From contig NW_026782091.1 of assembly GCF_031769215.1 (NCBI RefSeq), forward strand, positions 62,001-126,000: a stretch of DNA of 64,000 nt, given 5' to 3'. Below, piece by piece: positions 40,101 to 43,100 of the stretch. This stretch comes from Ylistrum balloti (lineage: Eukaryota). Under the pieces are notes generated by a model. The model was given only the letters and a program-made list of their open reading frames with translations. It had not been told where the DNA came from and made no database searches. The position numbers and the translations under genes are program-made. Position 1 is the stretch's first letter. Every line of letters starts with the position of its first letter.

Positions 40101-43100
40101 TAGACTTGTTGTATCACACTGTATGATTGCATGTGGTGAATATCACCTCATAGAAATCTGTGCCATTTTTCTTTTTAGAGCTTAAAAAGTTTCATTACTG
40201 GATAGACATACCACTGCCATTAGTTACTAATTCTTACTCGTCTTCATTTATCTTTCCTCTGTTCATTTCAGCAATGTTTCCGTTCCTGCTACTGTTTAAT
40301 TATTGTGTCATGTCTAGGATGTGCAACTTTAGGAAAACTTTACCACATGAGATGTACTTTGCTGGTGTAAGTGTAATGTTTACAAGGTCAAACTTACCTA
40401 AATACCTACTTCAATAAACATTTGTTCTACTCAATGACAATTCATATCATCATCACAAGGTCATGATCAAAGGAATTAGAAAGGTCATGGTCAAGGTCAT
40501 TGTAACTAAGGAAATATCAAGGTCAACGTAAAACATACTGATGCTGAAGAACTGGCCATTCCATTACTAAAGGTAAGTTAAGACTTCATGAAACAAATCC
40601 ATATATTCTGTTTACCTGTATTGAGGCCAGTCCTACAAAGGAGTGAAGGACACTCTCGTAAGTATTCTCCTCGCCTTCCATGATCATCTTCTGTAGATGA
40701 AGTCCATGTTTCTGTAGGACAGTGTCACATCGTTCAATTGAGCGACGGAAAACTTCGAACCTCATCATTGCACGTCCCATACCAGGCCACTGGGAACCCA
40801 TCCCAGAATACACCAGCCACAATGGTCGTTCAGGAATACTTGAACTGCAGTCCTGAAAATTATGTGCAAAAAGAAACTGATACCATGGGGTCTTTTATAA
40901 TGTAAAGCGAAATATTTCACTGTAGCATGATTATTTCTATCTGTATTAGTATACAGTTAAGTCATGATCCAGAAAACATTTAAATATCTGTCAAAACTCA
41001 AACTTAACAGTATGAACCATTGCAGTGGAATAGATAGTGAAATATGAACTACGTTACATTTCTAAGGAAACTGAAGATACTATGTTTAAATTCATAACAA
41101 ATAATAGTTCAGTAGGTCTTCGTTTTATAAAAGTTTTTTTCACCCTCACCTTGATTTCCTGGAGTCCATCAGCAGCATTAACCACTATGTAACCACGTAT
41201 AGGATGGTATGTGGGTGCCACATGGGCTGTTTCCTGTAGTAAGCAATGGAGGTGTACATTACTGGTATTACTTTGTACCAATCTGAATGCAGATTCTACC
41301 CCTTCCTTTGTCCTACCAGAGTATGTGAACAATCGACTTAAGGTTGTTGCCTGGTGGCTATTTGATTTCTGATCTTCGTGTGCTTTAAAGATTCCATGGG
41401 CACACAGATTTCCTAGTCCATAAGAGTTTAAGGACACTATACCACTGTTGCCCGGTAGTCGTGTCTTTTCCTGGACTACTTTGATCTGGCCGTTGAATGT
41501 GGTAGCTAGGTCTTGATTAGCAGTACAGAGGTGGAGGTTTGGAGGAATGATGTCCTCTTCCATTGTCAGTATCAGTTTAGCAAGTCCCACAAGGTCTATA
41601 AAGACAATGTTGTACATAAACAGATTATCAGTTCTGGGAAGACACCTGTAGGATTCTCAAAAAAAGATATCTTCTGTAATGTGTAAAGCTTACCTGATAC
41701 AGTTTCCATGTGACCAACATTTGATACTACAGAACCAATCAGAAGAGGTGATGATCTTTTACTGCTAATGACCTTGGCAAGAGCTTTCATTTCCCGTGTC
41801 TCCGCTTTGGAGACAGAACAACCACTCGTCTCAACATAAGACACTTGCTCTGGCAATACACCAGCTTCCTCATACACCATCTCTAAAAACTCTGACTGCT
41901 CTTCTACACTAGGGGGCAGCACTGCAAACACAGAACTTTGTATTATACACAAAACTTTTCAAACGTTGGAGTCCGAATGAAACCAATTTCATAAGCATTT
42001 TGTATTTCCAATATAAATACTGTGTAAGACAACATGTATATCAAAGTCTTTGAACAAAAAATGAAAAAGCAGTTTGCAATATTTTTTTATTATCTTTACT
42101 TAATTGTGTTTCTCTTAACTTTTAATTCATGATGATGTTGTCTGGCACCGATACTGGCATATCATTCTAATAAACTATTTCTTTACTTAATAATAATTCC
42201 ATATTTACCTGGGGATTGGGACTTGTAGGAGGCCAGCTTTGTATGTAAAATGGTAGAATAAATTCTCTTAGCAGAAGACTGCTTCTGTAGAAACATGGCT
42301 ACCACACCTTCACTTCTCACAAGGCCATCCGCTACAACCAGAAACACTTGTTCATATCAAGGATGCAAACTTGAGATCACAGTTAAAAGAATTATATGGG
42401 GTAATTTTATCGTGGCCTTAACAATTATTCTAATTTTCAGAATTTCCCAAGCATTTGTTTACCTTTTTCATCAAAGCAGTTACAGTGACCTTGAGATGAT
42501 AGAAGACCATTCCTGTGCAGCTGGGTGGAAGTTGTGATCTTTAGACAAAGGTTACATCCAGCAACAACTGCTGCCTGACACTGACCAGTTCGAAGGGCCA
42601 TCAGTCCACGATCCAAAGCCACAAGTCCACTTGCATGACCATTCCTCAAGGCGTAACTAGCACCTACAATATAAAAGATTAAAGTAGATGGAATTTAAGA
42701 TCGAGTTGTCTAGCCACCCACAGCTATAAACTTTGGTTATGGTCATTTATTTCATCTCCTTTGGTAATGCTTTAGCTCAAAAACCTTTAAAGGTAAAATG
42801 TAATAGAACATTTCAAATGATTTAAAGGAAAGTTGATGATGGAAAATTGGCATCACTCGCACCAAACCACCTCAGATGTACATAATGTCAACATCTCTAC
42901 AAACCAAGGTTTCTGTTTTCAATATATTTTTCTTCTCTGCATCCTTAGAACATGTTATGACAAAACTGAAGAATTAGTATGCAGAAAACTGCCAAGATTA
43001 TCAGTTTAATAGCCAGGGAACTTTTGGAATCCTGCACACTATCATCTCTTTGATGATTATAAAAGATTTGCAAAATACCATAGCTTATTTATAATCTTAA

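What the first reader, a model, noticed from the sequence alone, without database searches (positions are those of the whole stretch)
41694..42663. Ketosynthase catalytic set rewritten: Cys->His, His->Ser, Lys->Val
Seen: GPSxALDTACSSSL reads [14 protein letters not shown] (His codon at 42635-42637). EAHGTGT reads ETSGCSV (Ser codon at 41824-41826). TKSNMGH reads VVSNVGH, and SFGFGG reads SYGLGN. Established: human FAS KS needs C161, H293 and H331, with K326 assisting. Cys->Gln makes a decarboxylase (KSQ), while non-elongating KS0 domains in trans-AT PKS usually keep Cys and lose the HGTGT His. Inference: losing both Cys and the first His removes condensation and acyl transfer and probably decarboxylation too, leaving a dimerisation or docking scaffold. 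His at the nucleophile position plus a new Cys in ETSGC could form a repurposed site.
Basis: partly seen in the sequence, partly recalled or inferred. Interest (0 to 1): 0.8.

Follow-up and report, generated by a model that had tools for sequence, protein, structure and literature searches.

The report
Conserved dead ketosynthase in scallop FAS paralog
A scallop gene copied long ago from fatty acid synthase has lost the residues its chain-building (ketosynthase) domain needs, yet evolution still protects that domain as strictly as a working one, so it is a preserved pseudo-enzyme part rather than a dying gene.

Summary
The interval 41694-42663 (minus strand) is exons 4-6 of an intact, about 29-exon FAS-like gene (ATG 45460, stop near 19852) of the scallop Ylistrum balloti.

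Aligned without gaps to human FASN KS, the catalytic set reads:
- Cys161 to His (CAT, 42635-42637)
- His293 to Ser (AGT, 41824-41826)
- Lys326 to Val
- GFGG to GLGN
- His331 kept

This is not an error or a pseudogene:
- Three DNA runs show no variant at these codons.
- All splice sites are GT-AG.
- Four scallop genera share His and Ser.
- KS dN/dS against Pecten maximus is 0.117, versus 0.085 for the live canonical FAS KS of the same species pair.
- AlphaFold keeps the KS fold (TM 0.91 to human FASN).

The gene belongs to a bivalve-only paralog clade (scallops, Saccostrea, Mytilus, unionids). In that clade the first His is always lost, the nucleophile position varies (H/S/C/D) and the ER NADPH motif is gone. 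The MAT, DH, KR and ACP motifs stay intact.

Best reading: a condensation-dead, structurally retained pseudo-KS in a non-elongating FAS paralog. The "new His+Cys site" idea is weakened because the Cys is absent in Argopecten. A major survey filed the Mizuhopecten ortholog as ordinary FAS. The scan had not reported this KS before; a note on the same gene's TE agrees.

The parts
19852..45460 (-). Whole FAS-like paralog gene (KS-LD-MAT-DH-pseudoME/pseudoKR-pseudoER-KR-ACP-TE), about 29 coding exons. RefSeq splits it into XP_060068606.1 (P0270, KS+LD) and P0151 (MAT to TE).
   Evidence: tblastn of P0001 and P0153 on the window. CDS is identical to Ylistrum balloti locus L002. Pfam domains.
45310..45460 (-). 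Exon 1, with the start codon at 45460; N-terminus of the KS.
   Evidence: Pfam PF00109.
43567..43722 (-). Exon 2 (KS).
   Evidence: AG/GT; Pfam PF00109.
43239..43412 (-). Exon 3 (KS); it ends with FDFK and the first base of the Gly codon.
42463..42663 (-). Exon 4 (KS): nucleophile elbow [10 protein letters not shown]. His170 (CAT, 42635-42637) stands in place of the catalytic Cys.
   Evidence: AlphaFold places His170 between strand 163-166 and helix 172-185.
42209..42331 (-). Exon 5 (KS).
41694..41921 (-). Exon 6 (KS C-terminal half). ETSGCSV: Ser301 (41824-41826) stands in place of His293, and Cys303 is at 41818-41820. SVVSNVGH: Val334 (41725-41727) stands in place of Lys326, and His339 (41710-41712) is retained.
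41150..41595 (-). Exon 7: end of the KS (NSYGLGN in place of NSFGFGG; Leu405 at 41414-41416) plus the KS-MAT linker domain.
40613..40852 (-). Exon 8: start of the MAT. The canonical acceptor is at 40853/40852. An alternative acceptor near 40941, used in the RefSeq KS-only model, gives IEIIMLQ followed by a stop.
38622..40074 (-). Remaining MAT exons, with GHSVGE Ser, YWRG Arg and AFHS His intact.
36340..38347 (-). DH exons, with the HxxxGxxxxP His intact.
33451..34653 (-). Large pseudo-methyltransferase/pseudo-KR exon (about 400 aa).
28148..30779 (-). ER-like exons. The NADPH motif HSGSGGVG reads HDGASDIG, and the Pfam ER families score below their cut-offs.
25101..27774 (-). KR exons, with GGLGGFG and the Ser/Tyr/Asn motif intact.
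23336..23542 (-). ACP exon, with the GLDSL serine intact.
19852..22194 (-). TE exons. The nucleophile motif GYSFG reads GVEFG (Ser replaced by Glu) in this species.

Best explanation
This is the ketosynthase domain of a bivalve-specific paralog of animal type I fatty acid synthase. The domain can no longer make an acyl-Cys intermediate or carry out decarboxylative Claisen condensation. It is preserved as a folded, strongly selected pseudo-KS.

Most likely it now serves as the architectural and dimerising core of the condensing wing (KS-LD-MAT), as KS does in FAS, and perhaps as an ACP or substrate docking surface. The chemistry of the protein would then be done by the domains whose catalytic motifs are intact: MAT loading, KR reduction, DH dehydration and the ACP. 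ER is also dead, and TE is dispensable.

The protein therefore cannot elongate chains on its own. It either processes pre-formed acyl or beta-ketoacyl units up to the enoyl stage, or depends on a live KS elsewhere.

Shown: loss of the catalytic residues, an intact gene, conservation across species, purifying selection, a retained fold, and the state of the other domains' motifs.
Inferred: the scaffold role and the non-elongating mode of action.
For: Residue replacements against human FASN KS.

Intact gene: a 7-exon KS-LD model with GT-AG splice sites, in frame. No variants at the key codons in three DNA runs.

Conservation: the same His, Ser and Val/Ile in Mizuhopecten, Pecten, Argopecten and Ylistrum.

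Selection:
- KS dN/dS is 0.117 (CI 0.076-0.17; dS 0.74) against P. maximus.
- The live canonical FAS KS of the same two species gives 0.085 (CI 0.055-0.122).
- KS identity among scallop paralogs is 81-87%, against 85-87% for the canonical KS.

Fold: AlphaFold pLDDT 82.8 and pTM 0.82; Foldseek TM 0.91 and rmsd 2.3 A to human FASN KS-MAT.

Clade: the gene sits in a bivalve paralog clade (SH-aLRT 97-100). A scallop-only duplication is rejected (p-AU 2e-5). Shared derived residues include RNG for DTA and loss of His293. The varying residue at the nucleophile position (H/S/C/D) argues for relaxed chemistry at that site but a constrained fold.

Other domains: MAT, DH, KR and ACP motifs are intact, the ER motif is lost, and the TE Ser is variable.
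Against: - No biochemical or expression data were available: no RNA run exists for this species.
- The scaffold role is an inference from conservation. Equally strong purifying selection would also fit an unknown new catalytic or binding function.
- His170 is invariant in all four scallops.
- MAT keeps the Arg that selects malonyl, which is hard to explain if no condensation ever uses the loaded malonyl.
- RefSeq models in two species split the KS from the rest, and Argopecten has predicted isoforms lacking most of the KS. The KS may therefore not always be part of the same polypeptide.
Confidence: 0.6

Rival explanations
1. CLF-like or modifier subunit. The dead KS pairs with a live KS, either as a heterodimer with the canonical scallop FAS or with another FAS-like synthase. 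Chains carried on the paralog's ACP would then be elongated in trans but processed only by its own KR and DH, with no ER, giving unsaturated or polyene products.
For: - MAT retains the malonyl-selecting Arg, and the ACP, KR and DH motifs are intact, while KS and ER are dead. This makes sense if malonyl-ACP is consumed by another KS.
- The KS is as constrained as a live KS, as expected for an interface domain.
- A canonical FAS coexists with the paralog in every species that carries it and has full coverage here.
- KS/CLF heterodimers are an established principle in type II systems. From my own knowledge, FAS dimers with one fully disabled subunit remain active (Joshi, Rangan, Witkowski and Smith, 2003).
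Against: - Paralog and canonical KS are only 45% identical.
- No interface analysis, co-expression or interaction data could be obtained.
- No animal type I heterodimeric FAS is known.
Confidence: 0.2
2. Repurposed active site. His170 at the nucleophile elbow, together with His339 and the new Cys303, forms a new catalytic or metal-binding centre.
For: - His170, Ser301 and His339 are invariant in four scallop genera.
- His170 sits at the N-terminus of the elbow helix in a confident model.
- Selection on the domain is strong.
Against: - Cys303 is absent in Argopecten, which reads ETSGSV.
- Across the paralog clade the elbow residue is H, S, C or D, and the second His is Asp in oysters.
- At dN/dS of about 0.12, most sites are invariant among four scallops anyway.
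Confidence: 0.12
3. Decaying or recently dead pseudogene, or a sequencing or assembly artefact.
For: - Several catalytic sites in KS, ER and TE are lost at once.
- RefSeq splits the gene in two species.
Against: - There is no stop codon or frameshift in about 2,486 codons, and all KS-LD introns are GT-AG.
- dN/dS is 0.12 over the whole gene at dS 0.83.
- Orthologs are intact in four genera, and full-length models exist in two.
- Three independent DNA runs agree.
Confidence: 0.03

Closest known systems
Canonical animal type I fatty acid synthase (FASN; human 3hhd/9b7z, pig 2vz8; scallop canonical FAS P0156)
   Same: - Same domain order, with a largely shared exon-intron layout.
- The KS-LD fold superposes at TM 0.91.
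- It is the phylogenetic sister of canonical bivalve FAS.
- MAT, DH, KR and ACP motifs are identical in kind.
   Different: - The KS lacks Cys161, His293, Lys326 and the GFGG Phe.
- The ER lacks the NADPH glycine motif and falls below the Pfam cut-off.
- The TE Ser is Glu in this species.
- Identity to the canonical FAS of the same species ranges from 27% (TE) to 65% (MAT); the KS is 45%.
KS0, the non-elongating ketosynthases of trans-AT polyketide synthases
   Same: The HGTGT histidine is lost, so there is no decarboxylative condensation. The domain is kept as a folded part of the assembly line (PMC6855096).
   Different: - KS0 domains usually keep the Cys and pass the chain on. Here the Cys is His, although the Mytilus member of the clade does keep Cys.
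- The context is an iterative animal FAS-like single module, not a bacterial multimodular trans-AT line.
KSQ loading domains and chain-length factor (KS-beta) of PKSs
   Same: The active-site Cys is replaced. CLF is a non-condensing KS homolog retained as a dimer partner.
   Different: - KSQ has Gln and keeps both His for decarboxylation. Here the residue is His and the first His is lost, so a decarboxylase function is unlikely.
- CLF is a separate type II protein that pairs with a live KS-alpha. A partner for this domain is not known.
Animal FAS-like PKSs (AFPKs; EcPKS1/EcPKS2, mo-clades 1-4 of Lin et al. 2024)
   Same: They are molluscan FAS-derived megasynthases with altered reductive domains, for example an inactive ER.
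   Different: - AFPK KS domains are active.
- This KS scores higher against FAS than against EcPKS1/2 (360 versus 311 and 301 bits).
- The Mizuhopecten ortholog was classified as FAS, not AFPK, by those authors.
- A TE domain is present.

Membership tests
Animal type I FAS (functional fatty acid synthase) | Domain order KS-MAT-DH-pseudoME-ER-KR-ACP-TE in one polypeptide | tested here: met
   Pfam on P0270 and P0151, and tblastn exon order. Full-length orthologs P0295 and P0293 exist.
Animal type I FAS (functional fatty acid synthase) | KS catalytic Cys-His-His triad (human C161, H293, H331) plus Lys326 | tested here: not met
   The residues are His, Ser, His and Val.
Animal type I FAS (functional fatty acid synthase) | ER with an NADPH-binding GSGGVG motif | tested here: not met
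   The motif reads [10 protein letters not shown]00107 and PF13602 score 20 and 22 bits, below their cut-offs of 31.8 and 27. The canonical scallop FAS scores 62 and 58 bits.
Animal type I FAS (functional fatty acid synthase) | TE with a Ser nucleophile in GxSxG | tested here: not met
   The motif is GVEFG in this species. It is Ser in Mizuhopecten and Pecten and Ala in Argopecten.
Animal type I FAS (functional fatty acid synthase) | Phylogenetic placement within animal FAS | tested here: met
   The gene falls in a bivalve paralog clade that is sister to canonical bivalve FAS and lies inside the lophotrochozoan FAS. Lin et al. score the ortholog as FAS.
KS0 (non-elongating KS of trans-AT PKS) | Loss of the HGTGT histidine | tested here: met
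   ETSGCSV has Ser at that position; the His is lost in all eight paralogs.
KS0 (non-elongating KS of trans-AT PKS) | Active-site Cys retained for transacylation | tested here: not met
   His170 in scallops; Cys is kept only in the Mytilus paralog.
KS0 (non-elongating KS of trans-AT PKS) | Embedded in a bacterial trans-AT multimodular PKS | tested here: not met
   This is an intron-rich animal gene with its own MAT.
KSQ decarboxylating loading KS | Cys replaced by Gln, with both His retained | tested here: not met
   The Cys is replaced by His and the first His by Ser.
Chain-length factor-like dimer partner | Forms an obligate heterodimer with a catalytically active KS | not testable with these tools
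   No multimer modelling, interaction data or co-expression data were available.
AFPK (animal FAS-like PKS) | Membership of mo-clades 1-4, with an active KS making polyketides | tested here: inconclusive
   No verified AFPK sequence was in my tree. Indirect evidence points away from AFPK: phmmer bits are higher for FAS than for EcPKS, the authors label the ortholog FAS, and the KS is not active.

The most novel reading that the evidence does not exclude
The bivalve-wide paralog with dead KS and dead ER is a modifier subunit. It borrows a live KS, by heterodimerising with canonical FAS or with another FAS-like synthase. Chains on its ACP then undergo KR and DH steps but never ER, yielding conjugated polyenes. 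This would make it a candidate for the so far unassigned biosynthesis of the polyene pigments reported in scallop shells and unionid pearls. The clade's distribution (scallops, oysters, mussels, unionids) would fit that.
Probability: 0.1. Interest if true: 0.85.

Novelty: new variant of a known kind. Interest (0 to 1): 0.6.

Why it matters
Animal FAS is treated as a single, invariant housekeeping enzyme, and FAS-like paralogs are assumed to be active synthases.

This case shows an old, selectively maintained paralog whose condensing and enoyl-reducing centres are both dead while its loading, ketoreducing, dehydrating and carrier functions look alive. That is a pseudo-enzyme architecture not described for animal megasynthases.

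It gives a natural experiment on what the KS contributes beyond catalysis: dimerisation, ACP docking and shaping of the reaction chamber.

It flags a trap for homology-based annotation and HMM training. The Mizuhopecten ortholog was used as a training example for FAS.

It also opens a testable route to unknown bivalve lipid or pigment chemistry.

Tried and rejected
- **RNA evidence.** Both run searches found only DNA holders. Expression and the exon 7/8 junction could therefore not be tested. Read laying could only confirm the DNA.
- **Missing loci.** The look-up of encoding contigs found no locus for the Mizuhopecten and Argopecten proteins. dN/dS rests on one species pair (Ylistrum and Pecten).
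- **Word searches.** The third word search (P0167, region 1-450) was swamped by multimodular bacterial PKSs and added no bivalve paralogs. The KS-only query found only the window's own protein.
- **Pocket geometry.** Model coordinates are not exposed, so the geometry of His170, His339 and Cys303 could not be measured.
- **Literature.** Searches for scallop or bivalve FAS paralogs with a dead KS found nothing.
- **Pseudogene.** Rejected on dN/dS and the intact frame.
- **Assembly error.** Rejected on three DNA runs.
- **RNA editing restoring Cys.** Rejected. CAT needs two changes to become TGT/TGC; a single A-to-I edit gives Arg and a single C-to-U edit gives Tyr.
- **KSQ-type decarboxylase.** Rejected because the first His is lost.
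- **Scallop-specific duplication.** Rejected by the AU test (p 2e-5). The caveat is that long branches are involved and the group was named after the tree was seen. The shared rare motifs (RNG, and DxxxDIG in the ER) support the older origin independently.

Full report
**What is there**

The interval 41694-42663 lies on the minus strand inside a multi-exon gene. Stop-to-stop frames and Pfam scans of exon translations show KS N- and C-terminal halves, the KS-MAT linker and the acyltransferase in order.

I built the KS-linker part as seven exons:
- 45460-45310
- 43722-43567
- 43412-43239
- 42663-42463
- 42331-42209
- 41921-41694
- 41595-41150

Every intron is GT-AG, and the exons give 1479 nt in frame. 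The finding's start and end are exactly the start of exon 4 and the end of exon 6.

The gene continues through MAT, DH, the large pseudo-methyltransferase exon, an ER-like region, KR, ACP and TE, down to about 19852.

The coding sequence is identical (dN = dS = 0 over 2335 codons) to locus L002 of the Ylistrum balloti assembly GCA_031769215.1. The window is therefore saucer-scallop DNA.

**The observation**

phmmer alignments of exon 4, exon 6 and the whole KS-LD protein (P0270, the RefSeq product of these exons) to human FASN KS-MAT (3hhd, 9b7z) are essentially gap-free over 484 residues. They place:
- His170 under Cys161
- Ser301 under His293
- Val334 under Lys326
- His339 under His331
- NSYGLGN under NSFGFGG

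Contigs from three DNA runs in two studies cover the exons. They carry ordinary polymorphism, with 4 coding SNPs against about 36 intronic ones, and none at the key codons.

**Not a pseudogene**

Orthologs exist in Pecten maximus, Mizuhopecten yessoensis and Argopecten irradians at 76-82% identity. The next relatives are canonical molluscan FAS at about 40%.

All four scallops have RNGH, a Ser in place of the first His, Val or Ile in place of Lys, the second His, and NSYGLGN.

| Comparison (Y. balloti vs P. maximus) | dN/dS | 95% CI | dS |
|---|---|---|---|
| Paralog KS | 0.117 | 0.076-0.17 | 0.74 |
| Paralog, whole gene | 0.119 | not computed | 0.83 |
| Canonical FAS KS (live) | 0.085 | 0.055-0.122 | 0.86 |

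KS identity among the scallop paralogs (81-87%) equals that among canonical scallop FAS KS domains (85-87%). An AlphaFold model of P0270 is confident (pLDDT 82.8, pTM 0.82). It superposes on human FASN KS-MAT at TM 0.91 and rmsd 2.3 A, with His170 at the strand-to-helix elbow.

**A family, not a one-off**

In a maximum-likelihood tree the scallop genes fall in a bivalve-only clade with:
- Saccostrea echinata and S. cucullata
- Mytilus edulis
- the unionid Potamilus, plus P0009

This clade is sister to canonical bivalve FAS (SH-aLRT 97-100). Saccostrea, Mytilus and the scallops each also have a canonical copy.

A scallop-only duplication is rejected (delta lnL 185.5, p-AU 2e-5). The caveat is that long branches are involved and the group was named after the tree was seen.

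Rare shared changes support the clade independently:
- DTA to RNG next to the nucleophile
- loss of His293 in all members
- F to L/M at the GFGG gate
- the DxxxDIG rewrite of the ER NADPH motif

| Lineage | Residue at the nucleophile position |
|---|---|
| Scallops | His |
| Oysters | Ser |
| Mytilus | Cys |
| Unionids | Asp |

In oysters the second His is Asp.

By contrast, several catalytic motifs are intact throughout the clade:
- MAT Ser, Arg and His
- DH His
- KR glycine motif and Ser/Tyr/Asn
- ACP Ser

The TE Ser is Glu in this species, Ser in two scallops, Ala in Argopecten and Glu in unionids. The ER scores below the Pfam cut-offs, whereas the canonical scallop FAS passes them.

**How it most likely works**

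- Shown: the KS cannot form the acyl-Cys intermediate or use the His pair for decarboxylative condensation. The domain is nonetheless folded and as constrained as a live KS.
- Inferred: it is retained for what the KS does structurally in FAS, namely the dimer core and the platform for LD-MAT and ACP docking. The protein would act through MAT, KR, DH and ACP, stopping at the enoyl stage because the ER is dead.
- Open: whether it handles pre-formed acyl units as a homodimer, or borrows a live KS as a heterodimer in a CLF-like role.

The retained malonyl-selecting Arg in the MAT slightly favours some use of malonyl-ACP by a live KS.

The Cys is absent in Argopecten, and no residue is common to the clade at the elbow position.

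**Known or new**

The genes are annotated only as "fatty acid synthase(-like)". The broad survey of animal FAS, AFPK and PKS (PMC10764717) has the Mizuhopecten ortholog OWF51822.1 in its alignments and lists it as FAS. It was even part of the FAS training set (supplementary file 17). The text does not discuss KS inactivity. Other literature searches found nothing.

The closest concepts are KS0 domains (His lost; PMC6855096), KSQ and CLF. None is a membership match.

**Limits**

- No RNA data were available.
- dN/dS comes from one species pair.
- No coordinates were available for pocket geometry.
- The extent of the clade in other bivalves is under-sampled.
- RefSeq splits the gene at exon 7/8 in two species, and predicted Argopecten isoforms lack most of the KS. 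The KS-to-MAT junction still needs transcript proof.

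Noticed in passing
window 20976-21251 (TE exon), minus strand: The TE nucleophile motif reads GVEFG (Ser replaced by Glu) in this species. The same position is Ser in Mizuhopecten and Pecten, Ala in Argopecten, and Glu again (GHEFG) in the unionid paralogs. The TE nucleophile is therefore not conserved in this family.
   Followed up: partly
window 29337-29702 (ER-like exon), minus strand: The NADPH motif HSGSGGVG is rewritten to HDGASDIG. 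The rewrite is shared in kind by all bivalve paralogs. The Pfam ER families fall below their cut-offs, although dN/dS is still 0.17.
   Followed up: partly
window 40853-41149 (intron 7) and L001 9231-10001: RefSeq models in Y. balloti and P. maximus break the gene between exons 7 and 8. In Y. balloti the model uses an acceptor near 40941 that yields IEIIMLQ followed by a stop. In P. maximus the model appears to read on past the end of exon 7 (its end, L001 9692, lies 3 nt beyond the exon 7 match at 9689). Mizuhopecten and Argopecten models are full length, and Argopecten also has predicted isoforms X2 and X3 that lack most of the KS.
   Followed up: partly
window 44020-45230 (intron 1): High-copy dispersed repeat copies lie here. 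Contig word depth is up to 200-500, against about 18 elsewhere, and many contigs join to other loci. Several similar units of about 200 bp sit in a row.
   Followed up: no
window 47590-48450: A minisatellite-like tandem repeat gives long repetitive ORFs on both strands, with units like NYDTSETAAV and SQQLSPTC.
   Followed up: no
window about 1-14300; L001 44418-48695; L002 36560-40953: A PICK1-like gene (PDZ plus Arfaptin/BAR domains) lies downstream on the opposite strand. It is syntenic in P. maximus and Y. balloti. An acidic-tailed ORF at 13946-14242 may be its last exon; this was not checked.
   Followed up: no
P. maximus LR736838.1: The paralog (37.90-37.95 Mb) and the canonical FAS (49.22 Mb) lie on the same chromosome, 11 Mb apart. 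Roughly half or more of the intron positions are shared.
   Followed up: partly
literature: PMC10764717, supplementary file 17: The KS-dead Mizuhopecten ortholog OWF51822.1 is labelled FAS and was used in the FAS training set of a published HMM classifier. The Mytilus paralog also sits in those alignments.
   Followed up: yes
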